From IMG/VR virus record IMGVR_UViG_3300027816_000052, positions 62,001-126,000 of that record: 64,000 nt of DNA. One strand, 5' to 3'. Positions 1 through 55,539 of this stretch are shown piece by piece. The notes under the pieces were generated by a model. That model searched no databases, was not told the origin of the DNA, and worked only from the letters and a program-made list of their open reading frames with translations. The position numbers and the translations under genes are program-made. Numbering within the stretch: the stretch's first letter is position 1; every line of letters begins with the position of its first letter.

Positions 1-1023
1 CTATATACAGCGTTAAAAGAAAAGGATATTCTTAAAGATAAAAAATGTTTTGAGTTATTAGGTTACACTAAAAATGATTTAATAAAACATTTAACTAAAT
101 TACTAGAACCCGGAATGACCTTAGAAAATTATGGTGAGTGGCATATCGATCATATAATTCCAATATCTAAATTTAATTACACCTCAACGCAAGATGATGA
201 ATTTAAGGAATGTTGGTCATTAAGTAATTTAAAACCCATGTGGGGTCCAGAAAACATTAGTAAGAGTGATAAGATTATTGCGCATCAATATAAAATAAGA
301 CAACAAAAAGAAATCGAACAACAAAATGCAATTGATTTTAATATTACAAAAGTAAGTTTAAAGAATTGTGAAATTAGACAGATAACTAGAAAAGAATGTG
401 AACCAATCATAAATGAATATGAATGGTTAGGTTATCTTCCAAGATATACAAATTATTATTTTGGTATTTTCTTTAAGATTGACGATAGAGAAATTCTTGG
501 GGGTGTTGTCGCATATCAACCCGAATATGGTGAGAATATGGGGGTATGGGATAAATATGGTTATACGGGTAAAATAATACAATTAAGCAGAGGTGTTTGT
601 CTTTGGTGGACACCAAAAAATACAGCATCTTTCTTTATTACAAGAACAAATGAATGGTTAAAAAAGAATACACACTATAAGGTAGTTACAGCAACCGTGG
701 ACTCTTCCGCTGGTGAAATTGGTACTATATATCAATCAATGAATTGGTATTATGTTGGTACGTTTGGTGGTAATATAACAAAAACCGGTAAAGAGAGAAT
801 TCGTTATGGTTATATTATAAATGGTAAGACATACAATCAAAGACATATAAGAAGTATGATTGGTACAGCAAAAAAAGAAAATGTGTTAAAGCATTTTCCA
901 GATGTTAAAATGGTTAATTTGGGTAGGAAAAAAAGATATTTTACTTTCTTAGGTAATAAGAAAGAAAACGAAGAACTATTCAAACCAATAAAAAATTTAA
1001 TTAAGGAATATCCGAAACGATAA
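1..1023 (+). CDS. HNH-type endonuclease domain fused to Mom-like (GNAT) DNA-modification domain; 5' end lies outside the window
   Basis: Frame is open from base 1 (LYTALKEK...ELLGYT...HL...GMTLENYGEWHIDHIIP...CWSLSNLKPMW..EN: HNH motif). C-terminal part has Mom-like motifs QLSR...PKNTASFFI...VD...GEIGTIYQSMNWYYVG. Confidence 0.7.
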   Translation, partial: LYTALKEKDILKDKKCFELLGYTKNDLIKHLTKLLEPGMTLENYGEWHIDHIIPISKFNYTSTQDDEFKECWSLSNLKPMWGPENISKSDKIIAHQYKIRQQKEIEQQNAIDFNITKVSLKNCEIRQITRKECEPIINEYEWLGYLPRYTNYYFGIFFKIDDREILGGVVAYQPEYGENMGVWDKYGYTGKIIQLSRGVCLWWTPKNTASFFITRTNEWLKKNTHYKVVTATVDSSAGEIGTIYQSMNWYYVGTFGGNITKTGKERIRYGYIINGKTYNQRHIRSMIGTAKKENVLKHFPDVKMVNLGRKKRYFTFLGNKKENEELFKPIKNLIKEYPKR

Positions 1024-1025
1024 TA

Positions 1026-1268
1026 TTACCAAATTATTTTTTTCCAATCATCAATAAGTTTTTTTCTTTTTTCTTGGTCAATTCCAAGACTTTTTAAATC
1101 GTCCTCAATTTTTTGAACTAGTGTTGTTCTTTGTTCAATGATATTATCAACACCACCACCAAATGAAATTACCTTTCCAATTTTTGTTACATTAGATAAA
1201 ACTTCATGGTATTCTTGGGATGTTAATCCGGTTAAATGAAAGTTTGCTTGATATAATTGTTCACTCAT
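1026..1268 (-). CDS. hypothetical protein
   Basis: 80-aa ORF tightly coupled to 1261..1473. Confidence 0.6.
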   Translation of the reverse strand: MSEQLYQANFHLTGLTSQEYHEVLSNVTKIGKVISFGGGVDNIIEQRTTLVQKIEDDLKSLGIDQEKRKKLIDDWKKIIW

Positions 1269-1473
1269 TGGTCATTATATATCTTAAAGCTTTGGATACA
1301 ACTTCACTCTCCTCAAGAGAAAAGACTCCTCTTGAGTGTGCTGCTTTTATTGCTTGATTTAAACAATAAATTGCTTGTTCATTTGTCATTCCATTTGAAA
1401 AAGCATCCAAATCATTATTTGAATAATAATTTATTGAATTAAATAACGTACCTATTGGTGTTTTTTCTTCCAT
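1261..1473 (-). CDS. hypothetical protein
   Basis: 70-aa ORF with a TTGAAT-N16-TATATTT-like element upstream. Confidence 0.65.
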   Translation of the reverse strand: MEEKTPIGTLFNSINYYSNNDLDAFSNGMTNEQAIYCLNQAIKAAHSRGVFSLEESEVVSKALRYIMTNE

Positions 1474-1532
1474 TTTTATTTAAATATATAAAAATTTATC
1501 TCGCATTCAAGATATTTATTGTAAAAACTTTT

Positions 1533-3134
1533 ATGAAAGTTAAAAAAGAAATAATTTTTAGATTTTTGGATTTAAGATTTAGTCGATATACGTTGGTTAA
1601 ATCAAAATGTTCTGTTACTGGTGATTTGAGTTTTATCGTACCAGCTTGGGCAATGTATGCAATTGAATGCGGTAATTACGAGACATTAAGTGAAGAGGAA
1701 ATTGAAAGTCTTAATGATTTTTTGGATGATTTGGTTAAAACTTATGGTAATGCTGTGTTAGCTTTTGGGGATGAATCATATTTTTCAACAATCAATGATA
1801 TTGATAATTTAGGTGGTGACGTTTTTCAGGCTAGTTTAGTTCCAAGTGTAGTAAATACCTATATTGTGGATTTAAATAACGATAAATTAATAATGAAACA
1901 CGAATTTAAAAGTAATTATGTTTTTTTTAAGGATATAATATTTGAAATGAATTCTATTTTTAGTTTAAAAGAAGACGATTACAATTCACTTAGAGAAATT
2001 ATTAATGAGTGGGTTGAGGACAGATTTAATATACCAAGAAGTTTATCGACATTTCATACATTCTCAAAAATAAATTATCGTAACGATTTAATTTCATGTA
2101 TAATGCGTAAGGCAGTTGAGACAAAAAAACTAGATTATCTTAATAATAAAAAAAATAATGTTTCAGAAAATTCAAGTTCTAGATTTGCTGGTGAATATAA
2201 TGGACCGATTGAGTTGGGTTTAAGAAAGTGGAAAAATCCTGAACTTAAACCTTTTAGTGAAATTTCTTCGCATTTAGCAAATAACGATAGTAAAAGCAAA
2301 ACACTTAAAGATAACATAAAACGTATTGTTGGAATGTGGGAAAAAGGTTCAGATGGAACATATGATATACCAACACATGATGTTGATACAATTAATGAGG
2401 ATTTAGCTGTTTGGTTTGGTAAGAAAAAGAAACCAAAAGGTAGTAAACAACCACAAGGTCCGTGGGTTAATATTTGCAAAAAAGATAAAAATGGTAAACA
2501 TCCCCCATGCGGTAGAGGTGAAGCAAAAACATCTGCATATCCAAAATGTCGTGGATATGCTGCTGCTAGAAGAATGTCAGATGAAGCAAAAAGAAAAGCT
2601 TGTTCTCAAAAAAGAAGAGCGGAAAAAAAAGAACCAAAAACTGGAAAAGGAAATAAACCAACAATGGTTTCACATAAAAAGAAAGTTAAAATTAAGGAAT
2701 CCGACCTTTATAATATTATAAAGCGAGTTCTTCTTGAGCAGGAGGAAGAAAAAAGAACTGTTACATTTCCTGCGGGAGCATTTAAATCTTTCATAACATC
2801 ATCAAATGAAAAATTTGTTAAGATTCTTAATAACAAATATGATAGAGTTATTGTTAGTGGAGATTTGGATTTAGATGAGACAGATATTAAGATTTTACCA
2901 AATAATCTTGAAGTTAAGGGTATTCTCTTCTTAAGAGGGTCTTTGATTAAAGAATTACCAGAAAATCTTAAAGTTAATGGACAAATAGATTTAAGAAGTA
3001 CTAATATTAAATCTTTACCGAATAATCTTGTACATGAAAAAGGTTTTATTTGGATATTAGACACACCGTTAAATTACAATGAAGAATTAATAAATCATTA
3101 TGTGGATAAAAATTACGGGTTTTATAGATATTAA
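1533..3134 (+). CDS. multi-domain (polyprotein-like) putative head-associated protein with C-terminal leader + 3 LRR-like repeats
   Basis: ATG 1533 follows the ATATTTAT motif at 1512 (ORF track starts at 1455). Contains a basic Cys domain (EDLAVWFG..PWVNICK..PCGR..YPKCR) and, from ~2680, KKVKIKESDLYNIIKRVLLEQ followed by repeats homologous to 29139 and 54421. Confidence 0.75.
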   Translation: MKVKKEIIFRFLDLRFSRYTLVKSKCSVTGDLSFIVPAWAMYAIECGNYETLSEEEIESLNDFLDDLVKTYGNAVLAFGDESYFSTINDIDNLGGDVFQASLVPSVVNTYIVDLNNDKLIMKHEFKSNYVFFKDIIFEMNSIFSLKEDDYNSLREIINEWVEDRFNIPRSLSTFHTFSKINYRNDLISCIMRKAVETKKLDYLNNKKNNVSENSSSRFAGEYNGPIELGLRKWKNPELKPFSEISSHLANNDSKSKTLKDNIKRIVGMWEKGSDGTYDIPTHDVDTINEDLAVWFGKKKKPKGSKQPQGPWVNICKKDKNGKHPPCGRGEAKTSAYPKCRGYAAARRMSDEAKRKACSQKRRAEKKEPKTGKGNKPTMVSHKKKVKIKESDLYNIIKRVLLEQEEEKRTVTFPAGAFKSFITSSNEKFVKILNNKYDRVIVSGDLDLDETDIKILPNNLEVKGILFLRGSLIKELPENLKVNGQIDLRSTNIKSLPNNLVHEKGFIWILDTPLNYNEELINHYVDKNYGFYRY

Positions 3135-3532
3135 CCCAAAGACTCCAAAATTCTACTTAATGAGTGTTTAATATTTGAATTAATTTCCTTTTCCATTTGA
3201 AGTCTGCGTTTCTCAACTTCATTGTTAAACTCAGAAATAATTTTTTCATAATTTACGCCCTCCATAAAAATAGTATACGAATATACGTGGTTGACAATTT
3301 TTACCGTACCATCATGAATTACAATAAAAATACCGAGAGAATCGTTTTTAATATATCTTTTTTCACTAATTGGTGTTAAAAGGAGTGTAGTATCCTCTTT
3401 ATGAATTAATTTCTCACAGATTTTAAAACATTTAAATTCATGTTGCTGTTTTTTTGTTAAAGCAACATTACCAAATCTTTTAAATTTAATATAATTTTTT
3501 TGAAAAAATCTTTTAATTTTATGTAATAGCAT
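3131..3532 (-). CDS. hypothetical protein (probably early)
   Basis: 133-aa ORF preceded by a Bacteroidota-type promoter. Confidence 0.7.
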   Translation of the reverse strand: MLLHKIKRFFQKNYIKFKRFGNVALTKKQQHEFKCFKICEKLIHKEDTTLLLTPISEKRYIKNDSLGIFIVIHDGTVKIVNHVYSYTIFMEGVNYEKIISEFNNEVEKRRLQMEKEINSNIKHSLSRILESLG

Positions 3533-3552
3533 GTTGGTTAATTAATTTAATG

Positions 3553-3583
3553 CAAAGATATGGAATGTTTTTCAAATTCCAAA
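3553..3583 (-). promoter_or_regulatory. Bacteroidota-type housekeeping promoter (-33 TTTG / -7 TAnnTTTG)
   Basis: Minus strand reads TTTG-gaatttgaaaaacattcca (19 nt)-TATCTTTG, 20 nt upstream of the 3532 ATG. Confidence 0.7.
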
Positions 3584-3595
3584 ATATTTATGGAT

Positions 3596-5119
3596 ATGAA
3601 AAATATTTTAATAAATGATAATCAGTTAAAAAATTTGGTGGAATCAGTTAAACACATTTTAACTGAAGCCGATAAAAGAAATGTTATTATAGACAAAATT
3701 GGTTATTCAAAAGAATGGGCGGATGAGTTCCATAACTTAAGCGATAAATATTCTGTGTGGATTGCTGACTCTTATCTAAAAAAGAAAATGTCTGATAATA
3801 ACCGAACCAAAGAAGAAGTTTTAAAAAAAATAAATGAAAAAGGACCGGATGCAACATACACTTGGTTTAATGGAATTCAAGCAACATATCAATATATTTT
3901 AGATTGGTTAAAGGTACCAAGAAGAGAAGAAATTGATTTACAAAATTTAACATATGATGATGCTTATTTAAAAGCGCGTGAATGGCATGAATCATTAAAG
4001 ACCGGTGAAACAAAAAAATATGAAGAAACGGGCGAAATTATAATTGATTATCGGAATTCAAGAGGGGTTGGTTATTATTGGGTCAATCGAAAAACAAAGT
4101 ATTGTAGCGAAGAACAAAAAAGAATGGGGCATTGTGGTAAAACAGATTTGGGTGATACATTATTTTCATTAAGAAATGTTAATGAATTTGGTGAAGGACA
4201 AAGTTTTATTACAATAGCCTATAAAAATGATGGTACCGTTTATGACTTCAAAGCATCGGGTAATCAAAAACCATCACCAAAATATCATAAATATATTATA
4301 GACATTTTAACTCAGGATAAATATCCAATTAATAATTTATCAAGTGCTGGTCATTCACCAGAAACAAATTTTAAAATTTCTGATTTAAAACCAGAACAAA
4401 TTGAATATGTGTACTCGAAGAATAAAGCATTAAAATATAATATTAATGATAAATCATCGCATCCATATATTGTTAAAGATATTTTAGACGGTAAACTAAA
4501 TTTATCAAATTACTCAAAATCAGACCAAATTGATTTGATTAGAGCATCGAATGAGAATCCAAAATTAATGGAAATATTTAAAAACGAATTATCACATTTC
4601 AATAATTTATTATTGGGTAACACAAATAATATTAAGTTTATTGTTAAAAACTTTTTGGATGTATTTAAAGATTTATTAATTGGTTATATTAATGAAAAAA
4701 ATTATCCGCAGTTTAAACAAGCGTTGATTGTTATTAGTAGACTATTAAATGATTATAGGATAAATTTAATTGAACCATTTTGCGGAATTTTAGGAAAAGG
4801 TTTTACTAAATTTAAAAATAAGGAACTAGATATTATTAGTACCAGTGAAATTAACAGAGCAGTTTTAAGTTGCGCTAAAAAATATAAGTTAACCGATAAG
4901 TATGCTTATATATCTGATTTAAATAGACTTAATCACAGAATTGTAATTCCGGATGGTAAAGATAAAACGTTTGGTGTTATAGATGAGAAAGGAAATATAA
5001 TTATAGGTTTTAATTATGTTAGCTTAAGTCTTAATAAAGATGGTAATTATATTGGTAGAACATTAGGTAATGAAATTGAGGTATTGGACAAGACTGGAAA
5101 TTTAATTATACCGCAATAA
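3596..5119 (+). CDS. PcfJ-like domain protein with head-leader motif and C-terminal WG-like repeat
   Basis: AREWH...EEQKRMGHCG...LFSLR...ITIAY...FKASGNQKP is PcfJ-like; FGVIDEKGNIII is WG-like; likely start MKNILIND (3596) right after ATATTTAT. Confidence 0.55.
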   Translation: MKNILINDNQLKNLVESVKHILTEADKRNVIIDKIGYSKEWADEFHNLSDKYSVWIADSYLKKKMSDNNRTKEEVLKKINEKGPDATYTWFNGIQATYQYILDWLKVPRREEIDLQNLTYDDAYLKAREWHESLKTGETKKYEETGEIIIDYRNSRGVGYYWVNRKTKYCSEEQKRMGHCGKTDLGDTLFSLRNVNEFGEGQSFITIAYKNDGTVYDFKASGNQKPSPKYHKYIIDILTQDKYPINNLSSAGHSPETNFKISDLKPEQIEYVYSKNKALKYNINDKSSHPYIVKDILDGKLNLSNYSKSDQIDLIRASNENPKLMEIFKNELSHFNNLLLGNTNNIKFIVKNFLDVFKDLLIGYINEKNYPQFKQALIVISRLLNDYRINLIEPFCGILGKGFTKFKNKELDIISTSEINRAVLSCAKKYKLTDKYAYISDLNRLNHRIVIPDGKDKTFGVIDEKGNIIIGFNYVSLSLNKDGNYIGRTLGNEIEVLDKTGNLIIPQ

Positions 5120-5537
5120 TATCACCATCTTCTGTTACCATTATACCATCATCATATTTAAACGTTCCGTTATTACCCCTTATGTACCATTGATTTTTTT
5201 CTTGGTAAATACCAACATTTCTACAATTCAAAAATTTATTTAATCTATCTTTTGTTGTCGGTGTCCACCAACCTTTGGTATCTAATTTTATAATATTTGT
5301 GGGGTCTATTTTAATGATATATGTGCTATGGTATCTAATACCAATTTCGTTAATATCTGTTTTACTTAATAAAGTATTGTGACCAATTTTCTTACTTTCT
5401 CTATTACCTAACTCTTCTTTTAATTTATCATAATTTAATGATGTGCATGATAGATTAACTCTTTCTTTTATTAATCGTTTGGTTGAGTTAATCAAAGTTT
5501 CAAGTTGTGATTCTGTTATTATTATATTCTTTTTCAT
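5106..5537 (-). CDS. hypothetical protein with head-leader motif
   Basis: MKKNIIITESQLETLINSTKRLIKE followed by a small domain (YHST.I...LDTKGWWTPTTKDRLN). Confidence 0.7.
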   Translation of the reverse strand: MKKNIIITESQLETLINSTKRLIKERVNLSCTSLNYDKLKEELGNRESKKIGHNTLLSKTDINEIGIRYHSTYIIKIDPTNIIKLDTKGWWTPTTKDRLNKFLNCRNVGIYQEKNQWYIRGNNGTFKYDDGIMVTEDGDIIAV

Positions 5538-5556
5538 TTTGTTAATAATTTATTAT

Positions 5557-6417
5557 TTATTTATTTCTCCAACCACCACCTTGTTTTTTATACCATTTTG
5601 CCGCCCAACCACTAGCATAAGCCGAAGGCCAAACTTTATATTTTGATTTTGCTAAAGATTTTGCTTTTGACCATAGTTTTTTATTTGTTGGTTCACGTTT
5701 TGTTTCCTCATCCAATGGTCCAACAACAAATTCATCGTCCTCTTCATTCATCATAAAATCAAAAACTTGATCCAAATTTTCTGTTGCGGTTGTAATGTGG
5801 TCATCCGCCCAATCATGTCCATTTTGAAGTATGTCTTCAATCATTTGCGGTTCTAATGATAATAGTTTATCAATCTGTCTTCGCATTTGCTTCAAGTTGC
5901 TAAAAAACATGTAATTACCTGTTTTTTGCTCTTGGATTTTTGCATTTATTAATTCTATTAACTGCGATTCTGTTAATTTAATTGTTTTTTTCATTGTTAT
6001 ATTTCTATTTTCTTTTATTCCATCTCTTTTCTTTATTAAATCCGAAACTTTACCATGTGGGGGAAATTCAATAAACTTAAATAATTCTAATGCCCAACTT
6101 TCAACATAAGGTACAATTTCTTTTCTCTCAACACCCATAGCTGATGTGATATTATCTACTAACATACTTCGCATTGAGACCGAAGTTCTATCATGTTGTG
6201 TAGGTTCAAAACCTATTTCACTAAATTTTTGTTTTTCATTATAAAAAACTATTTCATTTTTAGCGTCACGTAATTCTTCTTCGGTATAGGATGGGTCAGC
6301 AAAAAGTTCAGGACCATAAGCTATTATCATAGCATTATAATATGTCATAACTAAACATTTAGATAATATAGCATCTAAATAAACATAAACCCCCCTCTTT
6401 ATTTTTTCCGGATTCAT
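5557..6417 (-). CDS. multi-domain hypothetical protein with internal leader motif and C-terminal basic WPSAYASG domain
   Basis: Internal MKKTIKLTESQLIELINAKIQEQ (ATG at 5994); C-terminus PTNKKLWSKAK..AK.KYKVWPSAYASGW...YK..GGGW. Confidence 0.7.
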   Translation of the reverse strand: MNPEKIKRGVYVYLDAILSKCLVMTYYNAMIIAYGPELFADPSYTEEELRDAKNEIVFYNEKQKFSEIGFEPTQHDRTSVSMRSMLVDNITSAMGVERKEIVPYVESWALELFKFIEFPPHGKVSDLIKKRDGIKENRNITMKKTIKLTESQLIELINAKIQEQKTGNYMFFSNLKQMRRQIDKLLSLEPQMIEDILQNGHDWADDHITTATENLDQVFDFMMNEEDDEFVVGPLDEETKREPTNKKLWSKAKSLAKSKYKVWPSAYASGWAAKWYKKQGGGWRNK

Positions 6418-8003
6418 TATTTCTTATTAACAATTTGAAATTTAATGGCTCTCTTATAAGTATCCTTTTCTCCACTAGTATTCACTTTTAAGTCAACAAA
6501 ATATTCATTCGGGAGCTTATCTCTCATATCAAAAATAAAATAATATTCATTTGGTGTTCTATTAACTAATGTCCAATCTTGAACCTGAACTTCGGTTTGA
6601 CCCTCTCTCACATAAACTCTATAATAAACCTCAACATCGGTTAAAAGTTGTTGTGTTGTATATGCTTTTTTAACAATAACACCAATTTTTCTAACATCAG
6701 TATTTAATATTTTTTCATCCTGTTTAATTCCATAAAAATCAAATCCTAAAATCGCGGGTTCTTTTGATTCAGTACCAATGTTAAAATAACTACCATAAGG
6801 TTTTATGATTAAATCATTTTCAACATTTGGTAATGGAATTCCATTGATTGCAATATTGCTCCAAACATCGGTATATTGACAAGGTGTTGTAATTCCTGTT
6901 ATAGAGGGAATCGTTACCTCATATATACCTTTTGTTATTAAGCACGTTGTTAACCCCATATAACCAGATATCGGGTCTCCATTGGTATCTAAAATTGATA
7001 CAACTGGATTGTTATCAAAATTTACATAATCACCATTAACATATGCGTAAAGATAAAGTTTGTTTTGTCTGTACTGAACAAAATTATTTCTATCATCTTG
7101 TATTAAATCATCATAAACCGTCTCAAGATATGGTTCATAAAATGTTTGTGTGTGTCTGGTAAAGAATCCAACGGAATAATTTTCAGATAAGCCGGTTAAA
7201 TTCTCAAGTTCAGGTTTAAATGCAATTCCCCAACCTGTAACACCCGTTAATGAACCATTTATAATTGAATTTATTTCATTTGTCATATCAAATTCAATAT
7301 CCTCATTTCCAAATTCAAAATGTTGGATATTGACAATGGTAATTGCGCTATAATTAATATTTCCGTTATTCTCATTGTTATATATTCCCGGTTCAGACCA
7401 ATAATCTAAAGTTGTTCTTTTTAACCAATTTGAGGGTCTCTGAGAGTATGACTTGTCTTCTGGTTCATAAAGTGGAACAGAAGCTCCCTGAGTCGAATTT
7501 AATGAGGTTGAGAAGTTATTATAATCATAACCAACACCTTCATCCCATAAAGCCAGTCCTTGGTCATAAATGCAAGTTGTTATTGCGGTTGGGTTTGGTA
7601 TAATTGGGTCGCAAGGGTCAATTGGTGTTGGTATTGGATTTCCGCTAATTGTACATGCTGCAATTTGGGGAATTCTAAATAAAATTAAATCAAAAGATGT
7701 TGCTCTTCTTCTACCGGAAGAATCTAATATATTTAATAGTTCTTTGTCAAAAGCGGATGTATTTGTCATACGTAACGTGTGGGTCATCGCTGTTGTACAC
7801 CCAGTTGAAATTGTTGTTCCAGTTATCTTATCAATTAATGGTTCTAAGTCCAAATCAAAGATAAATCTTGTATAACCTTTTGGAGCGATAGAATTGGGGT
7901 TTGTACCAAAATACAACTCAGTTACCGGATTTTGTCCGGTGTTTGTGCAATTATTGTAAATAATGGTATTATTTCTGCTAAAATATGACCTGTGTATTGA
8001 CAT
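6417..8003 (-). CDS. putative virion structural (baseplate-region) protein
   Basis: 528 aa, beta-rich composition, preceded by ATATTTAT, near the gp5-like gene. Confidence 0.5.
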   Translation of the reverse strand: MSIHRSYFSRNNTIIYNNCTNTGQNPVTELYFGTNPNSIAPKGYTRFIFDLDLEPLIDKITGTTISTGCTTAMTHTLRMTNTSAFDKELLNILDSSGRRRATSFDLILFRIPQIAACTISGNPIPTPIDPCDPIIPNPTAITTCIYDQGLALWDEGVGYDYNNFSTSLNSTQGASVPLYEPEDKSYSQRPSNWLKRTTLDYWSEPGIYNNENNGNINYSAITIVNIQHFEFGNEDIEFDMTNEINSIINGSLTGVTGWGIAFKPELENLTGLSENYSVGFFTRHTQTFYEPYLETVYDDLIQDDRNNFVQYRQNKLYLYAYVNGDYVNFDNNPVVSILDTNGDPISGYMGLTTCLITKGIYEVTIPSITGITTPCQYTDVWSNIAINGIPLPNVENDLIIKPYGSYFNIGTESKEPAILGFDFYGIKQDEKILNTDVRKIGVIVKKAYTTQQLLTDVEVYYRVYVREGQTEVQVQDWTLVNRTPNEYYFIFDMRDKLPNEYFVDLKVNTSGEKDTYKRAIKFQIVNKK

Positions 8004-16608: not shown

Positions 16609-18429
16609 TTAAGATTGGTATCTTTTTAATATTTTGGATATTATAGGATTTCTGACAATATCTTCTTCGGTAAATTCAAATAATCCGATTTCATCAATAT
16701 TTTGTAATCTTTTCATTGCATCATATAAACCCGATTTTTCTAATTGTTTAAATTTATCAGATTGCTCAACATCACCAATTATAAAGAATTTACTATTATG
16801 ACCTATTCTTGTTAAAATAAGTTTCATTTCCGCAGGTGTACAGTTTTGACTTTCTTCAAGAAGTAAAATTGAATTTTCAACCGAAATTCCGCGAATAAAT
16901 GAAATTGACATAACTTCAATTATGTTAAAAAACTCTAATTTACCAGCAACACCTTCACCTAATATTTTATTTAATAAATAAAATGATGCGTACATATATG
17001 GGTTCATTTTTTCTCGTTCATTTCCCGGAAGCGAACCTAACCTGCTTTCACCACCCTCTACGGCTGGTCGTATAATTATAATTTTTTCATATGGTGTTGT
17101 GGGATCTAATATTAATTCTATTGCAGTTCTTAATGTGAGGTGTGAATTATGTGTAACTATAAAATTATCCGTTAAATAAAGACCTTTTTCTGAATTAACA
17201 GTAATACATTTAGCTTCTTTATTACCAATAAATTCAACATTTGTTATATATCGTTTTGGTAAATATCTACTTTTTGGTTTGACCAATTTTAATTTTCTTT
17301 TTAATCTAAAAGGAGTAATTTCGTTTGGTAAACAAATACATAATTCGTATGCTAATAATCCCATAATTTTTTCGCCTTCTTTATTTCTATAAAATGGTTG
17401 TTTTAACCATCTTTTAACAACACCACCTAAACTATTAACTAAAAAAACCATATCATCTGCTAATTTTTTAGATGTGGTTGTAAAAAATACTGAACCAGAT
17501 TTTGAATCTACTGTACCGTCAGTATCCATTAGACCTTGTAATAGAGAAATTCTATTTTCAATCGAATTGAACATATATTCATAAGGTATAAATTTATTTT
17601 CACTTTTTTTATAAAGTAAATTTAATTGGTTTAGCTCATTCAAAAATTCGTTTTTCCCGTTCTCACCAATAATTGAATATTTATATTTACCTTTTGGTTT
17701 GTTTAGGTGAATATTTTCTGGAATTAAAGCTTTTATGTTCTCAACAATTTCATTATCTGCACATGTAAACGTAATGTATTGTGTTAATCCCCCATCACCA
17801 ATAAGTACCCCCAATATATATGGGTCAATTAATAATTTTTGTTCATTAAATTGAACAGGTTTTGTAACTGGAATTGAATGATTTTTATCACCTCTTTTTG
17901 TTGTTAATGTTTCTTTAATTTTTTTTAGTGTTTTAACACTATAATCTTTTGGTGAAGAAATTCTTTTATTTAATCTATTTTCACCGACTCGTTTTCTGGC
18001 ATTTCTCTCATAATAAGTTTTTGTATACCATAAATGATCTTCACATGATTCGGTAAAAGTACCGTCATTAAATAATACTCTATAAATCGGCTTTTCCCCT
18101 TGTGGATGAACCGCAATAACCTCAACCGGGTTTCCATTTTCATCAATAACAAAATCTCCTACGACTATATCACCCATATTAACCATTCCGGTGGGTGTAA
18201 TTATTTTGGCATCAATTGGTTGTGCTTTTCCTGTACCAGCACTTCCTGAACAAATTGTAATTTCTTTTTCTTTTAAGAGTTGATAAAATTTTTTTTGGTT
18301 TTCGTTTAAAAATTTTTCTTTTGGTCTTTTTGTTATGATATTAGCAATTAAATCTTTCTTATTTATTTCCTTTGGTTCTTCAGGAACTTGATTTACCGTT
18401 TTTGGTTTTGCTTTTTGTTTTGCTGGCAT
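16609..18429 (-). CDS. phoH: PhoH-family ATPase interrupted by an intein
   Basis: GSAGTGK P-loop, IIIIRPAVE, LGSLPG..EKM.PY, IRG...LEESQN..., LTRIG..SK..I.GD..Q.D, VRNP. Confidence 0.92.
   Translation of the reverse strand: MPAKQKAKPKTVNQVPEEPKEINKKDLIANIITKRPKEKFLNENQKKFYQLLKEKEITICSGSAGTGKAQPIDAKIITPTGMVNMGDIVVGDFVIDENGNPVEVIAVHPQGEKPIYRVLFNDGTFTESCEDHLWYTKTYYERNARKRVGENRLNKRISSPKDYSVKTLKKIKETLTTKRGDKNHSIPVTKPVQFNEQKLLIDPYILGVLIGDGGLTQYITFTCADNEIVENIKALIPENIHLNKPKGKYKYSIIGENGKNEFLNELNQLNLLYKKSENKFIPYEYMFNSIENRISLLQGLMDTDGTVDSKSGSVFFTTTSKKLADDMVFLVNSLGGVVKRWLKQPFYRNKEGEKIMGLLAYELCICLPNEITPFRLKRKLKLVKPKSRYLPKRYITNVEFIGNKEAKCITVNSEKGLYLTDNFIVTHNSHLTLRTAIELILDPTTPYEKIIIIRPAVEGGESRLGSLPGNEREKMNPYMYASFYLLNKILGEGVAGKLEFFNIIEVMSISFIRGISVENSILLLEESQNCTPAEMKLILTRIGHNSKFFIIGDVEQSDKFKQLEKSGLYDAMKRLQNIDEIGLFEFTEEDIVRNPIISKILKRYQS
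17146..18225 (-). mobile_element. class 3 intein (360 aa) with LAGLIDADG homing endonuclease
   Basis: Inserted after the P-loop GK; starts with Ala (AQP), ends THN followed by Ser; W in block B (DHLW), C in block F (AKCITV), T in block G (VTHN); LAGLIDADG motifs LGVLIGDG and LQGLMDTDG. Confidence 0.9.
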
Positions 18430-25715: not shown

Positions 25716-26000
25716 ATGAGAACAAAAAATAAAAAACCAACAAGAATAACTGAAAAACAGTTAGTAGCAATACTTAAAAAAGTAATTAATGAGCAAGATT
25801 CTTCAGAATATGATGATAATGAAGATGAAAAAGAAGAACATATTAAATTTATTGAAGATGCGGTATATGATTCGGCAATGAGTATTATAGGAAATTTAAT
25901 AGCGGTTATTGATGACAACTATGAAGAAGGTATTGTTTTTGCTTTAGAGGAATTGGATTCTATTAAAAAAATTATAATGGATGTAAAAACAAGTTATTAA
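25716..26000 (+). CDS. acidic protein with head-leader motif
   Basis: TRITEKQLVAILKKVINEQ; ATATTTAT at 25687. Confidence 0.65.
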   Translation: MRTKNKKPTRITEKQLVAILKKVINEQDSSEYDDNEDEKEEHIKFIEDAVYDSAMSIIGNLIAVIDDNYEEGIVFALEELDSIKKIIMDVKTSY

Positions 26001-26001
26001 T

Positions 26002-26415
26002 ATGAAAAATTTATTAAAAATTACAGAAGACGAAAAAAAGCATATTTTAACTATGCACAAAACCAAAATTAATGAAAGTGATTTTGGTAGAATTGCTGGC
26101 GCTATTGCGGCAACAGGAGCAATAATGACACTAATATTGGCGCAAAGAGCGGTCGATATTTATGATTCAGAAGGAAATTCTGTTGAGGCTAATGTTGGTG
26201 ATACATATACTGGTATTGTAACTGAAATGGTAGCAAAACCAAAAATGGGATTTGTTGTTAAAATGGAAACAGATGATGGTCATACTTTAGATTTCATGAC
26301 ATATTACAATAATTTTGTAACAGGTGATAAAATTAAGGTTGTTATTGGACGAGAATTTAATTCAGGTGGAATGATGGTGTTTCCTGATGTAACACACACA
26401 GAAAAAGTTAAATAA
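26002..26415 (+). CDS. protein with head-leader motif, one hydrophobic helix and an OB-like beta domain
   Basis: KITEDEKKHILTMHKTKINES, then IAGAIAATGAIMTLILA. Confidence 0.65.
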   Translation: MKNLLKITEDEKKHILTMHKTKINESDFGRIAGAIAATGAIMTLILAQRAVDIYDSEGNSVEANVGDTYTGIVTEMVAKPKMGFVVKMETDDGHTLDFMTYYNNFVTGDKIKVVIGREFNSGGMMVFPDVTHTEKVK

Positions 26416-29138: not shown

Positions 29139-29900
29139 ATGAAAAAGATAAAATTAACAGAATCAGATTTATATAGAATTGTTAGAAAGGTTCTTCTTGA
29201 GCAAGAGGAAGAAAAGAGAAGTTTTACATTTTCTCCGGGAACATTTGCGTCTTTTATAACATCATCATCAGGTGAAAGATTTGTTAAACATCTTAATAAC
29301 AAATATGATGAGGTTATTATTAATGGTGATTTGGATTTAGATGGAACACCAATTCAATCCTTACCTGATAATCTTCATGTTGGTGGGGATTTGAATTTAT
29401 ATGGAACACCAATTCAATCCTTACCGGATAATCTTTATGTTGGGAGAAATTTGGATTTAAGAGGAACACCAATTCAATCCTTACCGGATAATCTTTATGT
29501 TGGGAGAAATTTGGATTTACAAGGAACACCAATTCAATACTTACCGGATAATCTTCATGTTGGGGGAAGTTTGTGGTTAAATGGAACACCAATTCAATAC
29601 TTACCGGATAATCTTCATGTTGAGGGAAGTTTGGATTTAAGAGGAACACCAATTCAATCCTTACCGGATAATCTTTATGTTGGGGGATATTTGAATTTAC
29701 ATGAAACACAAATTCAATCCTTACCGGATAATCTTTATGTTGGGGGATATTTGAATTTACATGAAACACAAATTCAATCCTTACCGGATAATCTTTATGT
29801 TGGGGGGACAATTTATATTAATGGAATACCTTTAAATGATAATGATAAGTTGGTTGCAAAATATAAAGAAAAATATAGAATTGATAGAGCACTTATTTAA
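29139..29900 (+). CDS. LRR-like repeat protein (8 x 20 aa) with head-leader motif
   Basis: Leader MKKIKLTESDLYRIVRKVLLEQ; repeats LxVGGxLxLxGTPIQSLPDN. Confidence 0.85.
   Translation: MKKIKLTESDLYRIVRKVLLEQEEEKRSFTFSPGTFASFITSSSGERFVKHLNNKYDEVIINGDLDLDGTPIQSLPDNLHVGGDLNLYGTPIQSLPDNLYVGRNLDLRGTPIQSLPDNLYVGRNLDLQGTPIQYLPDNLHVGGSLWLNGTPIQYLPDNLHVEGSLDLRGTPIQSLPDNLYVGGYLNLHETQIQSLPDNLYVGGYLNLHETQIQSLPDNLYVGGTIYINGIPLNDNDKLVAKYKEKYRIDRALI
29320..29810 (+). repeat. 60-nt tandem repeat array, 8 units
   Basis: Successive 60-nt lines align in register (ggaacaccaattcaatccttaccggataatctt...). Confidence 0.95.
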
Positions 29901-42662: not shown

Positions 42663-43931
42663 ATGGCTAATAAAAAAATTAGTAACTTACCTGAGTATAA
42701 CACACCACAACCAAATGATGTGTTACCAATTGTTAATGTTGCTAATAGCGTAACACAAAAAGTACTATTTTCAGCAATTAGTCAAACAATAACATCAGGA
42801 TTAGTTGATGTTTTTGTGACTGGTGGTACTTATTCAGCTGGAACAGCAACATTTATAAATAATACTGGCGGAACGTTTAGTGTTAGTGGCTTTACCGATA
42901 GTCAAGCAGGTTCCTCAGGAACATCAGGGACAAGTGGCTCATCTGGCTCTAGCGGAACATCAGGGATAAGCGGCTCTTCAGGAAGTTCTGGAACATCTGG
43001 TACAAGTGGTTCATCAGGAAGTTCTGGTACAAGTGGTTCATCTGGTAGTTCAGGAACATCTGGAACAAGTGGTTCATCAGGAAGTTCTGGTACAAGTGGT
43101 TCGTCAGGTTCTTCAGGAACAAGTGGTTCATCTGGTAGTTCAGGAACATCTGGAACAAGTGGTTCATCAGGAAGTTCTGGTACAAGTGGTTCGTCAGGAA
43201 GTTCTGGTACAAGTGGTTCGTCAGGTTCTTCAGGAACAAGTGGTTCATCAGGAAGTTCTGGTTCTTCAGGTACAAGTGGAATAAATGGTTCTTCTGGAAC
43301 ATCAGGAACAAGTGGTTCATCTGGTAGTTCAGGAACATCTGGAACAAGTGGTTCATCAGGAAGTTCTGGTACAAGTGGTTCATCAGGAAATTCTGGTTCT
43401 TCAGGAACAAGTGGTTCATCTGGTAGTTCAGGAACATCAGGAACAAGTGGTTCATCAGGAAGTTCTGGCACAAGTGGTTCGTCAGGTTCTTCAGGAACAA
43501 GTGGTTCATCTGGTAGTTCAGGAACATCTGGAACAAGTGGTTCATCAGGAAGTTCTGGTACAAGTGGTTCGTCAGGTTCTTCTGGTACAAGTGGTTCATC
43601 AGGAAGTTCTGGTTCTTCAGGTACAAGTGGAATAAATGGTTCTTCTGGAACATCTGGTACAAGTGGTTCTTCAGGAAGTTCTGGTACAAGTGGTTCATCA
43701 GGTTCTAGCGGAACATCTGGCACAAGTGGTTCTTCAGGAAGTTCAAGTGTTACTAATTTTCCGGTAACTTTTAATAATTCTGGAAGTGGAAATGCATCTG
43801 GGGTTAATTTTGATGGTTCTGTTGCACGAACTGTTAGTTTTAATACAATAGGTGCAAATAAAGTAATAACCTCTGGTACCGCTGCTCCGACCGGAGGTAA
43901 TGATGGAGACATCTATTTACAATTTACATAA
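42663..43931 (+). CDS. fibre protein with a long Gly-Ser-Ser/Gly-Thr-Ser repeat
   Basis: MANKKISNLP N-terminus; ~280 aa of G-X-X repeats; C-terminus SGTAAPTGGNDGDIYLQ. Confidence 0.75.
   Translation: MANKKISNLPEYNTPQPNDVLPIVNVANSVTQKVLFSAISQTITSGLVDVFVTGGTYSAGTATFINNTGGTFSVSGFTDSQAGSSGTSGTSGSSGSSGTSGISGSSGSSGTSGTSGSSGSSGTSGSSGSSGTSGTSGSSGSSGTSGSSGSSGTSGSSGSSGTSGTSGSSGSSGTSGSSGSSGTSGSSGSSGTSGSSGSSGSSGTSGINGSSGTSGTSGSSGSSGTSGTSGSSGSSGTSGSSGNSGSSGTSGSSGSSGTSGTSGSSGSSGTSGSSGSSGTSGSSGSSGTSGTSGSSGSSGTSGSSGSSGTSGSSGSSGSSGTSGINGSSGTSGTSGSSGSSGTSGSSGSSGTSGTSGSSGSSSVTNFPVTFNNSGSGNASGVNFDGSVARTVSFNTIGANKVITSGTAAPTGGNDGDIYLQFT
42908..43746 (+). repeat. 9-nt (GSS/GTS) tandem repeat with higher-order duplication
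   Basis: ggt tca tca / gga aca agt units; the rare GIN unit recurs 351 nt apart (43271, 43622). Confidence 0.9.
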
Positions 43932-51009: not shown

Positions 51010-52545
51010 TTAATCTAAAATAAATAATAAGTCCTTATCTTTAAAGATACAAACGCCCTCATCAATTATTGTGTTAGCGTTTGAAAATACATATGTTTTT
51101 TTGTTTTTTTCAAAAATTAACCAATCGGTTTTGTATTTTTTTATTGAAGATGACGGTACTATTTTAATGGTATTATTTTCGGTTACAATTTCTTTAGCTG
51201 GTTTTATTTGCGCATTTGCCACCAATCCATTAAGCTTAACTTGCACATCAATTCCTCCGCGCATATCATCACTATTACCGTAACCAGAAATTTTTGCAAC
51301 ATTGTTTTCACCAAATCGTTTAATTAAAGCATCCACCACTAAATTTTCAATCGAATCCCCCTTTTTTGTTGTCTCTGAAAGAGCGGTAATTAATTTTTTA
51401 AATGTTTTGGACTCCTTACTAAAAATTCTATACTTAAATAAATCAATATGTTCCATTAAAGTGGAAATCTGTTTTTTTAATTCTTCCTTATTTTGAGAAT
51501 TATTAAGGAAATCAATAGAATCTTTACCATTGATTTCTAAGACTTTATTAATGTCTTCAGTCAAAATCTTTAATCCTAAAATGTTTGTGTTTAATTTATT
51601 AAGGACAGACCATCCCTTTTTCTCAACATCATAAACACCGTGTATATCATTTATTATTCTAAAATTTTCATTAAAAACTTCAGAGAGAACATTACCAATG
51701 AAAACTTTATAACCTTCAAATAATTCCTTATTTTTTTTATAAACTTCTAAGTAACTTCCGAAGTTTTCTCTACCATAAGATTCTTCTAATATTTCAGAAC
51801 TATTATTCATACTCTCTTTAATATTTTCATTTTGTTGATTTTCTAGTCGTTCATTAATATATTCCCAATTAACGACTCTCCAGAAATTTTCAATATACTT
51901 ATCTTTCTGGTTTCTATAAGTAAGATAGTAAGCATGTTCCCATAAATCAAGTCCTAATAGGGGAAAACCGCCATTATCAACAATACCCATCAACGGGTTG
52001 TCTTGATTAGGTGTGTTCATTATTTTTAATGTACCTCTTTTTGTTAAAACCAACCAAACCCATCCGGAACCAAAACGTTCTTTTGCGGAAGCTTCAAATT
52101 TTTTTCTAAATTCTTTTATTCCACCAAAATTTTTTTGAATTATTTTAAGAATTGGACCGCTAGCTTCTTGTTGTTTTGGAGATAACATCTTCCAAAAAAT
52201 TGCATGATTATATGCTCCACCGGCATTATTTCTAATATCGGTGTTATATTGACTAATTGTTTTGACAATATGTTCTAAATCATCCTCTTTTTTTCCGCTT
52301 TTTGTTAAAGCATCATTTAATTTATTAACATAACCAATATAATGTTTGTTATAATGGTAACTCATAGTTTCCGGGTCAATAAATTTTTTTAGCGAGTCAA
52401 ACTTATACGGTAACTTTTCAATTGGAATTTTACCTTTTACGTTTTTAACCTTTTTTTCTTCTCGAAGGTAACCCTTTTTCATTTCTACTCTGTAGATTTC
52501 TTCCTCCAATCTGTCAATTCTATTAATTAAATTTTTCATGACCAA
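51010..52545 (-). CDS. Mn/Fe superoxide dismutase fused to a PD-(D/E)XK nuclease-like domain
   Basis: LPY..L...ID.ETM.YHY.KH..YV, NAGG.YNH..FW, FGSGWVWL, NQD, DLWEHAYY; C-terminus G...E...DDMRGGIDV.......QIKP. Confidence 0.85.
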   Translation of the reverse strand: MVMKNLINRIDRLEEEIYRVEMKKGYLREEKKVKNVKGKIPIEKLPYKFDSLKKFIDPETMSYHYNKHYIGYVNKLNDALTKSGKKEDDLEHIVKTISQYNTDIRNNAGGAYNHAIFWKMLSPKQQEASGPILKIIQKNFGGIKEFRKKFEASAKERFGSGWVWLVLTKRGTLKIMNTPNQDNPLMGIVDNGGFPLLGLDLWEHAYYLTYRNQKDKYIENFWRVVNWEYINERLENQQNENIKESMNNSSEILEESYGRENFGSYLEVYKKNKELFEGYKVFIGNVLSEVFNENFRIINDIHGVYDVEKKGWSVLNKLNTNILGLKILTEDINKVLEINGKDSIDFLNNSQNKEELKKQISTLMEHIDLFKYRIFSKESKTFKKLITALSETTKKGDSIENLVVDALIKRFGENNVAKISGYGNSDDMRGGIDVQVKLNGLVANAQIKPAKEIVTENNTIKIVPSSSIKKYKTDWLIFEKNKKTYVFSNANTIIDEGVCIFKDKDLLFILD

Positions 52546-54420: not shown

Positions 54421-55539
54421 ATGAAAAAGATAAAATTAACAGAATCAGATTTATATAGGATAATTAAACAAGTTCTTTTTGAACAGGAGGAAGAAAAGAG
54501 AAGTTTTACATTTTCTCCGGGAGCATTTGCATCTTTTATAACATCATCATCAGGTGAAAGATTTGTTAAACATCTTAATAACAAATATGATGAGATTGTT
54601 GTTAATGGGGGTTTGGATTTACAAGGAACACCAATTCAATCCTTACCGGATAATCTTAAAGTTGGGGGATGGTTGGATTTACGAGGAACACCAATTCAAT
54701 CCTTACCGGATAATCTTCATGTTGGGGGAAATTTGGAGTTAGATGAAACACAAATTCAATCCTTACCGGATAATCTTTATGTTGGGGGAAATTTGGAGTT
54801 AGATGGAATACCAATTCAATACTTAGGGAATAATATTCATGTTAAGGGAAATTTGGAGTTAGATGGAATACCAATTCAATACTTAGGGAATAATATTCAT
54901 GTTGGGGGAAATTTGTATTTATATGGAACACAAATTCAATCCTTAGGGGATAATCTTCATGTTGGGGGAAATTTGGATTTATATGGAACACCAATTCAAT
55001 CCTTACCGGATAATCTTCGTGTTGGGGGATGGTTGGATTTAAAAAGAGCACCAATTCAATCCTTACCGGATAATCTTCATGTTGGGGGAGATTTGTTTTT
55101 AAGTAAAACACCAATTCAATCCTTACCGAATAATCTTCATGTTGGGGGAAGTTTGTATTTACAAGGAACACCAATTCAATCCTTACCGGATAATCTTTAT
55201 GTTGGGAGAAATTTGGATTTAAGAGGAACACCAATTCAATCCTTACCGGATAATCTTCGTGTTGGGGGAGATTTGTGGTTAAATGGAACACCAATTAAAT
55301 CCTTAGGGGATAATCTTTATGTTGGGGGAAGTTTGTGGTTAAATGGAACACCAATTCAATACTTACCGGATAATCTTCATGTTGAGGGAAGTTTGGATTT
55401 AAGAGGAACACCAATTCAATCCTTACCGGATAATCTTCATGTTCCAAAAATTATTTTAATTAAAACCACGCCATTAAGTGATAATTATGAATTGGTTCAG
55501 ACATATAGTGAAAAATATAAAATTAATAGTACTTTTTAA
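54421..55539 (+). CDS. LRR-like repeat protein (14 x 20 aa) with head-leader motif
   Basis: Near-identical leader/N-cap to 29139; repeats LxVGGxLxLxGTPIQSLPDN. Confidence 0.85.
   Translation: MKKIKLTESDLYRIIKQVLFEQEEEKRSFTFSPGAFASFITSSSGERFVKHLNNKYDEIVVNGGLDLQGTPIQSLPDNLKVGGWLDLRGTPIQSLPDNLHVGGNLELDETQIQSLPDNLYVGGNLELDGIPIQYLGNNIHVKGNLELDGIPIQYLGNNIHVGGNLYLYGTQIQSLGDNLHVGGNLDLYGTPIQSLPDNLRVGGWLDLKRAPIQSLPDNLHVGGDLFLSKTPIQSLPNNLHVGGSLYLQGTPIQSLPDNLYVGRNLDLRGTPIQSLPDNLRVGGDLWLNGTPIKSLGDNLYVGGSLWLNGTPIQYLPDNLHVEGSLDLRGTPIQSLPDNLHVPKIILIKTTPLSDNYELVQTYSEKYKINSTF
54601..55440 (+). repeat. 60-nt tandem repeat array, 14 units
   Basis: Lines 54601-55381 align in register. Confidence 0.95.

What the first reader, a model, noticed from the sequence alone, without database searches (positions are those of the whole stretch)
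2679..3134. Third, older LRR family member fused to the end of an unrelated multi-domain gene
The same leader + N-cap (KKVKIKESDLYNIIKRVLLEQEEEKRTVTFPAGAFKSFITSS.EKFVKILNNKYD), three diverged repeats and the same C-cap (I..TPL..N.EL...Y..K) sit in-frame at the 3' end of 1533..3134. DNA similarity to the other copies remains in the leader (gttcttcttgagca.gaggaagaaaa; ttataacatcatca) but the repeats are not homogenised. This suggests the cassette has moved to at least three sites, possibly by recombination through the shared leader, and that this copy has dropped out of module exchange.
Basis: partly seen in the sequence, partly recalled or inferred. Interest (0 to 1): 0.6.

Follow-up and report, generated by a model that had tools for sequence, protein, structure and literature searches.

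The report
Phage LRR cassette fused onto another gene
In one lineage of a large freshwater T4-like phage, a small leucine-rich-repeat gene that sister phages keep as a separate gene 2 kb away has been moved and joined in frame to the end of an unrelated conserved phage gene. The join lies in a short helix motif that both genes share, so this is a clean but fairly ordinary example of phage domain shuffling.

Summary
ORF 1533..3134 (533 aa) ends in a leader, an N-cap, three 20-aa LRR units and a C-cap, all homologous to the LRR genes at 29139..29900 and 54421..55539. It is not the third copy: the 256-kb phage record holds at least 10 leader+LRR genes. This is the only one with the leader inside a longer ORF.

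The fusion is real. Three other metagenome contigs are identical across it, and contigs from four sequencing runs bridge the junction.

The fusion is derived, not ancestral. Orthologs of the host gene at 65-67% identity are 403-405 aa and have no LRR tail. Two of those lineages carry the orthologous 154-164-aa LRR gene standing alone. In the one with DNA on hand it lies about 2 kb downstream on the other strand, at a site that is empty in the window. Synonymous divergence of the cassette (1.08) matches that of the flanking genes (1.04-1.20), so the cassette was relocated rather than newly acquired.

The 5' junction lies where the host gene's leader-like C-terminal tail meets the LRR leader. 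The repeats are not homogenised (63-70% against 91-94% for six core copies). The leader, however, shows a recent exchange with another copy. The function of the cassette and of the leader is unknown.

The parts
1533..3134 (+). Fused ORF, 533 aa: host gene X plus the LRR cassette.
   Evidence: The identical protein P0002 is in the protein collection. Three other contigs are identical over 2560..3140.
1533..2147 (+). N-terminal part of X (about aa 1-205). It is lineage-specific and was found only in about five close orthologs.
   Evidence: There is a weak DUF6926 hit below the Pfam cut-off. The AF2 model is poor.
2160..2663 (+). Conserved, basic core of X (about aa 210-377) with four invariant Cys. 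It belongs to a phage-only family with more than 4,000 hits.
   Evidence: 4,353 hits; invariant columns; phrog_23735; only phage hypothetical proteins in the Atlas, the nearest named family being DUF5872.
2664..2684 (+). Last X-derived codons (M-V-S-H-K-K-K). This is the 5' junction zone and is microhomologous to the 5' end of the stand-alone LRR genes (ATGGTT ... AAAAAGA).
   Evidence: The blastn breakpoint against L014 falls at 2684.
2685..2750 (+). LRR-type leader helix (V-K-I-K-E-S-D-L-Y ... E-Q-E-E-E).
   Evidence: AF2 models a helix at model residues 14-28. The tract 2697..2747 differs by 2 bases from copy A.
2751..2867 (+). N-cap of type 1, 78% DNA identity to copies C, E, F, H and J.
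2868..3047 (+). Three 20-aa LRR units, not homogenised.
   Evidence: AF2 pLDDT is 94-98 over this region.
3048..3134 (+). C-cap and stop codon. The closest C-caps are those of the site-2 genes of sister phages (P0127, P0131).
3138..3165 (+). Remnant of X's ancestral last codons, now downstream of the new stop. It is kept because it overlaps the 3' end of the minus-strand gene 3131..3532.
   Evidence: Alignment to L014 5165..5215.
5112..5113 (.). Empty 'site 2'. Sister phages hold the orthologous stand-alone LRR gene here, on the minus strand.
   Evidence: Window 3141..5112 matches L014 5193..7184 and window 5113..6019 matches L014 7656..8557, so L014 7185..7655 is missing from the window. The gene order is the same in L097-L099. 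P0003's contig has a 154-aa minus-strand gene in the same order (gene table only, no DNA), which matches P0127 on a 6,082-base contig.
29139..29900 (+). Stand-alone paralog E (8 units), homogenised.
54421..55539 (+). Stand-alone paralog F (14 units), homogenised.

Best explanation
This is a lineage-specific, in-frame gene fusion in a roughly 256-kb freshwater T4-like phage. The common ancestor of this phage and its nearest sampled relatives had two genes here. Gene X was about 404 aa and ended in a short basic run plus an amphipathic helix. A separate 150-165-aa gene, made of a leader, an N-cap, three LRR units and a C-cap, lay about 2 kb downstream on the opposite strand. In the window's lineage the LRR reading frame, and only that (456 bp, without its conserved 5' flank), now replaces the last 17 or so codons of X. 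The old site is empty. The 5' join lies in a microhomology (ATGGTT ... AAAAAGA) at the matching position of two similar motifs, X's tail helix and the LRR leader helix. The product therefore keeps a helix where X had one, and keeps the leader in front of the LRR. The 3' join is immediately after the LRR stop codon. The most likely mechanism (inferred, not shown) is ectopic, microhomology-guided recombination or break repair that copied the cassette into X's 3' end, followed by loss of the original copy. At least 10 leader-bearing LRR genes in the genome supply substrates for such events. The tail is predicted to fold as a short capped LRR solenoid, which is a protein-binding module. What it binds, and what the leader does, are unknown.
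For: The frame is open and the tail is homologous. The junction is real: three other contigs are identical, and bridging contigs occur in two DNA and two RNA libraries. Orthologs P0003-P0006 (65-67% identity, full coverage) are 403-405 aa and end in their own tail, without LRR. Synteny with L014 shows the cassette reversed at another site, that site empty in the window, and breakpoints at 2684/2685 and about 3135. L097-L099 share L014's gene order, and P0003's contig has a 154-aa minus-strand gene in the same order. The cassette's nearest relatives are those site-2 genes. Its dS against L014's copy is 1.08, against 1.04-1.20 for three flanking ortholog pairs, and dN/dS is 0.36. All nine other copies have the leader at their N-terminus with a conserved box just upstream, which the fused copy lacks. 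The same point of the X family is a recurrent junction. Some members are fused to other leader-bearing modules, even keeping the leader's Met (P0030, P0031, P0036, P0038). One member ends early and is followed 13 nt later by a leader-bearing gene. The AF2 model has pLDDT 88, and its best structural matches are solved LRR domains (LIC11098 Z 10.4, SspH1 Z 8.8).
Against: Polarity rests on two sister lineages that may be each other's closest kin, so a never-occupied site 2 in the window's lineage cannot be strictly excluded. The N-cap of L014's copy is of another type, so the cassette is a mosaic and 'orthology' holds best for P0127 and for the C-terminal half. Tree supports are moderate (83/74 and 90/38). 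The similarity between X-family tails and the leader is weak by HMM: only 4 of 119 reach 8 bits, though shuffled sequences never exceed 1.5 bits. dN/dS mostly reflects time before the fusion, so it does not show that the fused tail is still useful. Nothing shows that the fused protein is made as one chain. RNA-library contigs may be DNA carry-over.
Confidence: 0.82

Rival explanations
1. The tail is an ancestral, fixed C-terminal domain of gene X.
For: None beyond the open frame.
Against: Four ortholog lineages at 65-67% identity lack the tail and end in their own conserved tail. More than 100 listed family members end within 20-30 aa of the core.
Confidence: 0.01
2. It is an artefact: two genes were merged by an assembly chimera at the repeated leader, or by a sequencing error that hides a stop or a frameshift.
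For: The leader is repeated at least 10 times in the genome. Contigs L095 and L096 start inside an LRR gene and look chimeric.
Against: This copy's leader and flanks differ from all others, 70-93% identity. Three other assemblies are identical over 581 bases. Contigs of four runs bridge the junction with 0 differences. The upstream side of the junction is X-specific sequence and the downstream side is cassette-specific.
Confidence: 0.02
3. The join is real but functionally two products. Either the LRR part is translated on its own from the retained ATG at 2664, or the chain is cut at the leader (I-K-E|S, a T4-type L/I-x-E site) by the phage's prohead protease. In either case the fusion would be nearly neutral.
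For: An ATG-GTT lies 7 codons before the leader, as in the stand-alone copies. The genome has a T4-type prohead protease, a scaffold protein and a capsid protein with an I-N-E|A motif at the expected maturation site. The T4 consensus itself is quoted from memory. A second in-frame 'internal leader' lies at 5557..6417. Fusions recur at the same point in other members of the X family.
Against: The ATG belongs to X's invariant M-x-S motif, so it is not evidence for a start. The conserved upstream box of the stand-alone copies is missing. No cleavage data exist. Typical X-family tails have T/K-N-E rather than L/I-x-E.
Confidence: 0.25
4. The tail is a decaying passenger: a recent accidental read-through fusion with no function, on its way to loss.
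For: It is the shortest and most diverged copy, with no homogenisation.
Against: There are 152 codons without a stop in a 30% G+C genome. The AF2 model is confident and the caps are intact. dN/dS is 0.36. The leader was recently exchanged with copy A. The sequence is identical in many freshwater samples.
Confidence: 0.1

Closest known systems
T4-even internal proteins (IPI, IPII, IPIII and relatives) with their shared capsid targeting sequence
   Same: Both are a set of otherwise unrelated or fast-diverging small phage proteins that share only a short N-terminal motif, in a phage with a T4-type protease, scaffold and capsid module. In T4 only the targeting sequence is conserved, and it directs the proteins into the scaffolding core (PMC3012670). 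Here about 19 ORFs share the leader.
   Different: The leader sequence is not the T4 one. Packaging and cleavage are untested. The conserved part of this leader extends about 12 residues past the putative cleavage Glu. The motif also occurs at the C-terminus of family X.
Short bacterial LRR domains of 20-residue period (the LRR domains of SspH1 and IpaH, and Leptospira LRR proteins such as LIC11098)
   Same: The period is 20 aa, and the repeat pattern (L-x-L-x-x-T-x-I-x-x-L-P-x-N-L) and capped solenoid are similar. The predicted structure aligns with LIC11098 (Z 10.4, 114 residues, rmsd 3.2), SspH1 LRR (Z 8.8) and IpaH1.4 LRR (Z 7.4).
   Different: Sequence identity is only about 14%. There is no NEL ligase or any other effector domain. 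Pfam LRR models do not reach threshold. Foldseek gave no hit at E <= 0.001. The caps differ and are specific to this phage family.
Concerted evolution of repeat-protein gene families by gene conversion, and mosaic (modular) evolution of phage genomes
   Same: Six copies share near-identical units across loci. N-caps are swapped between lineages. A cassette was relocated through short shared sequence.
   Different: Here the exchange made an in-frame fusion with a different gene family. The fused copy takes part only through its leader.

Membership tests
The phage's own leader+LRR family | Leader, N-cap, 20-aa units and C-cap in that order | tested here: met
   all four parts are present, with 55-62% identity to the paralogs.
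The phage's own leader+LRR family | Stand-alone gene with the leader at the N-terminus and a conserved box just upstream | tested here: not met
   the leader starts at residue 385 of a 533-aa ORF, and the upstream box is absent.
LRR superfamily | Tandem units with the L-x-x-L-x-L-x-x-N/T-x-L core forming a solenoid | tested here: met
   The period is exactly 20. AF2 pLDDT is 94-98 over the units. The top structural matches are LRR proteins, Z 10.4 to 7. This rests on a predicted structure only.
LRR superfamily | Match to a curated Pfam LRR model above its cut-off | tested here: not met
   no LRR model hits P0001. For paralog E, LRR_14 reaches only E 0.076.
IpaH/SspH-type effectors | LRR domain joined to a NEL E3 ligase domain | tested here: not met
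   there is no such domain. The partner here is phage family X.
T4-type capsid-targeted internal proteins | Genome encodes a T4-type prohead protease and scaffold | tested here: met
   PF03420 at 78.8 bits, with the scaffold-like and Gp23-like genes next to it.
T4-type capsid-targeted internal proteins | N-terminal targeting sequence cleaved at L/I-x-E, and the protein found inside heads | not testable with these tools
   The leader has L/I-T/K-E-S. That is a resemblance only, and no proteomic data were available.
Phage family X (phrog_23735-containing, more than 4,000 hits) | Conserved basic core with four invariant Cys and the M-x-S-(Y/H)-K motif | tested here: met
DUF5872 (PF19197) | Pfam gathering score | tested here: not met
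   no hit for P0001. One search gives only an Atlas lead, score 0.80.

The most novel reading that the evidence does not exclude
The 'leader' may be a portable address tag of this phage group, for example a capsid- or scaffold-targeting and protease-processing signal like the T4 capsid targeting sequence. In this genome it is carried by about 19 unrelated proteins, and a similar motif ends a phage family with more than 4,000 hits. The expanded, gene-converting LRR family would then be a diversifying set of packaged, perhaps injected, host-binding proteins. In-frame fusions at the tag, as seen here, at 5557..6417 and in several relatives, would be tolerated because the tag is cut or works in either position.
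Probability: 0.2. Interest if true: 0.7.

Novelty: new member of a known kind. Interest (0 to 1): 0.42.

Why it matters
This is an unusually well-resolved example of how phage proteins gain domains. Both the 'before' and the 'after' states are sampled, both breakpoints are mapped to within a few bases, and the age of the cassette is tied to the age of the phage split. It also points to two uncharacterised things that may matter more than the fusion itself. One is a short helix motif shared by many unrelated proteins of freshwater T4-like phages, which marks a recurrent fusion and split point. The other is a phage-specific LRR gene family of 10 or more copies that evolves by concerted evolution.

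Tried and rejected
- DNA search of the phage collection with 1..8000 found nothing related.
- Literature search for the leader as a text string found nothing relevant. A search for LRR families in jumbo phages found only plant and animal papers.
- Foldseek against PDB gave no hit at E <= 0.001. The exhaustive aligner was needed.
- The AF2 model of the X part (1-400, 43-row alignment) was too poor to search: pLDDT 48.
- The Atlas gave only phage hypothetical proteins.
- The 142-aa extension in front of the second internal leader has no relatives outside the same phage.
- A leader HMM detects typical X-family tails only weakly, so the tail-to-leader resemblance is stated as a resemblance, not as shown homology.
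- Contigs of P0003 and P0005 could not be read as DNA; only their gene tables were available.
- No complex prediction was run, because no binding partner is claimed.

Full report
**What the window is.** The window is bases 62001-126000 of a 256,029-base IMG/VR virus record, about 85% complete and 30% G+C. It carries T4-type head genes just upstream of the window: a portal region, a prohead protease (PF03420, 78.8 bits), an acidic scaffold-like protein and a Gp23-type capsid protein. Inside the window are baseplate, sheath and tail genes, a family-B DNA polymerase, ThyX and many glycosyltransferases. Runs that hold the locus are mostly labelled freshwater or lake water; several are labelled 'fungus metagenome'.

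**The observation.** ORF 1533..3134 gives a 533-aa protein, P0001.
- Its start matches that of its orthologs.
- From residue 383 onward it aligns with the stand-alone genes 29139..29900 and 54421..55539 through a leader helix, an N-cap, 20-aa units and a C-cap.
- The three units lie at 2868..3047 with a period of exactly 20.

It cannot be chance: the tail matches the paralogs at E 1e-42 to 1e-22 in the genome-wide search.

**Size of the family.** The whole record holds ten full leader+LRR genes, here called A to J.
- They lie at G000 positions 635, 27142, 42879, 64673 (copy D, the fused one), 91139, 116421, 146940, 152846, 162302 and 227519.
- There is also a cut copy at the contig end and a distant one near 222,300.
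- In nine of the ten the leader follows the initiator Met directly, and a conserved box (ATATTTAT-GGTT or -AATT) lies just upstream. Only D has the leader inside a longer frame.
- Copies C, E, F, H, I and J share near-identical 60-nt units across loci, with a mean best identity of 91-94%. Copies A, B, D and G do not; D reaches only 63-70%.

**Is the fusion real?**
- Three other IMG/VR contigs from different metagenomes are identical over 2560..3140.
- Contigs from two DNA runs (2365..3320 and 2423..3036) bridge the junction without a difference.
- Contigs from two metatranscriptome libraries do the same: one covers the whole of 2300..3400 and the other covers 2454..2791.
- The RNA libraries may contain DNA, so this shows presence but does not prove transcription.

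**Is the tail ancestral?** No.
- A protein search with residues 1-380 found four ortholog clusters at 65-67% identity with full coverage. They are 403-405 aa and end about 27 residues after the conserved M-V-S-H-K-K-K in a tail of their own.
- Only the identical protein P0002 has the LRR tail.

**Where the cassette is in the relatives.** The related contig L014 is colinear with the window at 73-87% DNA identity, apart from four differences:
- L014 has two extra genes after the Mom-like gene.
- Window 2685..3140 (456 bp, the cassette) stands where L014 has 52 bp that encode the end of X's tail.
- L014 has a 164-aa leader+LRR gene on the minus strand at 7177..7671, between the 519-aa gene and the Kyano_Gp96-like gene. 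In the window these two genes abut at 5112/5113.
- The window has 378 extra bases at 6020..6397.

The window's cassette aligns with L014's gene in reverse orientation at 66% identity. The gene order of L014 recurs in three longer contigs. P0003's contig (gene table only, no DNA) has the same gene order with a 154-aa minus-strand gene. That gene matches P0127, a 154-aa protein on a 6,082-base contig.

P0127 is colinear with D over its whole length, N-cap type included. L014's copy shares the three units and the C-cap but has the other N-cap type.
- In the tree of the N-terminal part, D pairs with P0127 (support 83/74).
- In the tree of the C-terminal part, D groups with P0127 and P0131 (support 90/38).
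- Nei-Gojobori dS between D and L014's copy is 1.08, against 1.04, 1.18 and 1.20 for three flanking ortholog pairs. dN/dS is 0.36, against 0.19-0.23.

The cassette is therefore as old as the split of the two phages. It is the same gene at a different place.

**The junctions.**
- On the 5' side the window follows X up to the codons M-V-S-H-K-K-K (2664..2684) and then follows the LRR leader.
- The stand-alone LRR genes read ATGGTT-ATG-AAAAAGATT at this point, and X reads ATGGTT-TCACAT-AAAAAGAAA. The switch therefore lies in a microhomology.
- On the 3' side, similarity to L014's LRR gene ends at the stop codon (3132..3134).
- A few bases later the window resumes X's ancestral last codons. These are retained because they overlap the end of the minus-strand gene 3131..3532.
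- Only the reading frame moved. The upstream box did not.

**Why it happened there.**
- The tail that X lost (K-K-K-T-N-E-E-Q-I-K-R-L-V-D-L-I-V-L in the orthologs) and the leader that replaced it (K-K-V-K-I-K-E-S-D-L-Y-N-I-I-K-R-V-L-L) have the same make-up: a basic run, then x-E-S/E, then an amphipathic helix.
- Nearly all listed members of the large X family end in such a tail.
- By HMM the similarity is weak. Only 4 of 119 members reach 8 bits, while shuffled sequences never exceed 1.5 bits. A further 29 tails score above that control at the right place. I therefore call it a resemblance.
- The same point is a recurrent junction. Several family members continue past it into other modules that begin with a full leader, Met included (P0030, P0031, P0036, P0038; also P0025, P0042, P0033 and P0106).
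- In L106 the X homolog stops right after the basic run, and a 467-aa gene with a canonical leader starts 13 nt later.
- Fused, tailed and split states thus all exist in nature.

**The leader is not specific to the LRR genes.** An HMM of the motif finds about 19 ORFs in the genome.
- Ten are the LRR genes.
- The others include the 519-aa gene at 3560..5119, the Kyano_Gp96-like gene at 5106..5537, the DUF5872-tailed gene at 5557..6417 and the small genes at 25716..26000.
- Seventeen have the motif at the N-terminus.
- The second internal case, 5557..6417, is also lineage-specific. Its L014 ortholog starts at the leader's Met, and the 142-aa extension occurs only in this phage.

**Module exchange.**
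- D's units are not homogenised, but its leader is 93% identical to copy A. Within that, a 51-nt tract at 2697..2747 has 2 differences.
- The leader is 85% identical to its own ortholog and 70-78% identical to the other copies.
- Contigs of copy A were picked up on exactly this tract.
- So D still exchanges sequence through the leader.

**Fold.**
- With a 17-row alignment, AF2 gives pLDDT 88 and pTM 0.75. The model has a helix for the leader (lower confidence), a small helical N-cap, a short solenoid and a helical C-cap.
- Foldseek found nothing at E <= 0.001.
- The exhaustive aligner ranks LRR proteins first: LIC11098 (Z 10.4, 114 residues, rmsd 3.2), a flagellar-motor chain 8z5u_0 (Z 9.0), SspH1 LRR (Z 8.8), IpaH1.4 (Z 7.4), XopL (Z 7.2) and LegL1 (Z 6.6).
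- The tail works like a short bacterial-type LRR domain. It is not a member of the effector families, because it has no NEL domain or other effector domain.
- Pfam LRR models do not reach threshold.

**Gene X.**
- Its N-terminal 205 residues occur only in the close orthologs.
- Residues 210-380 are a very conserved, basic, four-Cys core found in more than 4,000 phage proteins. It has no Pfam family; it matches phrog_23735, whose function is unknown.
- The model is poor. The Atlas offers only a lead to DUF5872.
- Its function is unknown. A nucleic-acid-binding or head-internal role is a guess from its composition and from its position next to the head genes.

**Distribution.**
- The short cassette family is rare: 18 proteins in the word-indexed search of 5.8 billion.
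- Relatives also join the LRR module to other domains. P0140 has a leader and LRR followed by a 250-aa C-terminal part. P0142 has a 230-aa N-terminal part followed by LRR.

**Verdict.** 'Third', 'older' and 'dropped out of exchange' need correcting. As an event it is an ordinary kind of phage domain shuffling. The shared leader motif and the expanded LRR family are the parts worth further work.

Noticed in passing
window 5557..6417 (-), leader Met at 5992..5994: A second in-frame 'internal leader'. A 142-aa extension found only in this phage runs without a stop into the leader-bearing, DUF5872-tailed gene. The L014 ortholog of that gene starts at the leader's Met. The extra DNA is window 6020..6397.
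   Followed up: partly
whole genome G000; in the window e.g. 3560..5119, 5106..5537, 25716..26000, 26002..26415: About 19 ORFs with unrelated bodies begin with the same motif: a basic run, then L/I-T-E-S/K-Q/D-L, then an amphipathic helix. No description of it was found in the searchable literature.
   Followed up: partly
L095 1..1125 and L096 1..1110: Contigs from other metagenomes carry, at the locus of copy F, a gene whose 5' half equals copy C and whose 3' half equals copy F. Both contigs start inside the gene, so this could be a real recombinant or an assembly chimera.
   Followed up: no
L106 2390..2530: An X-family gene ends right after its basic run, and a 467-aa leader-bearing gene starts 13 nt downstream. 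This is the 'split' counterpart of the fusions.
   Followed up: partly
window 16609..18429 (-): A PhoH-like ATPase is interrupted after its P-loop by an insert of about 370 aa with a LAGLIDADG homing-endonuclease domain. It is probably an intein, and unusually it seems to begin with Ala.
   Followed up: partly
window 51010..52545 (-): A phage-encoded Fe/Mn superoxide dismutase (both Pfam domains) carries an uncharacterised C-terminal extension of about 270 aa.
   Followed up: partly
window 42663..43931 (+): A protein made mostly of G-S/T-S-G-S-S triplet-like repeats, which produce long shadow ORFs in other frames. It sits among tail genes and is probably a fibre.
   Followed up: no
window 2708..3064 (-), 29320..29811 (-), 54842..55294 (-): Long antisense open frames lie over every LRR gene. 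They are most likely shadows of the repeat's codon pattern, not genes.
   Followed up: no
L014 1805..3451: The sister phage has two extra genes (382 aa and 165 aa) between the Mom-like gene and the small minus-strand genes. The window has none there (1024/1026).
   Followed up: no
fold search of the tail model: The second-best structural match, which has the highest sequence identity (23%, and 32% in Foldseek), is chain 0 of a polar flagellar motor structure (8z5u). It was not examined.
   Followed up: no
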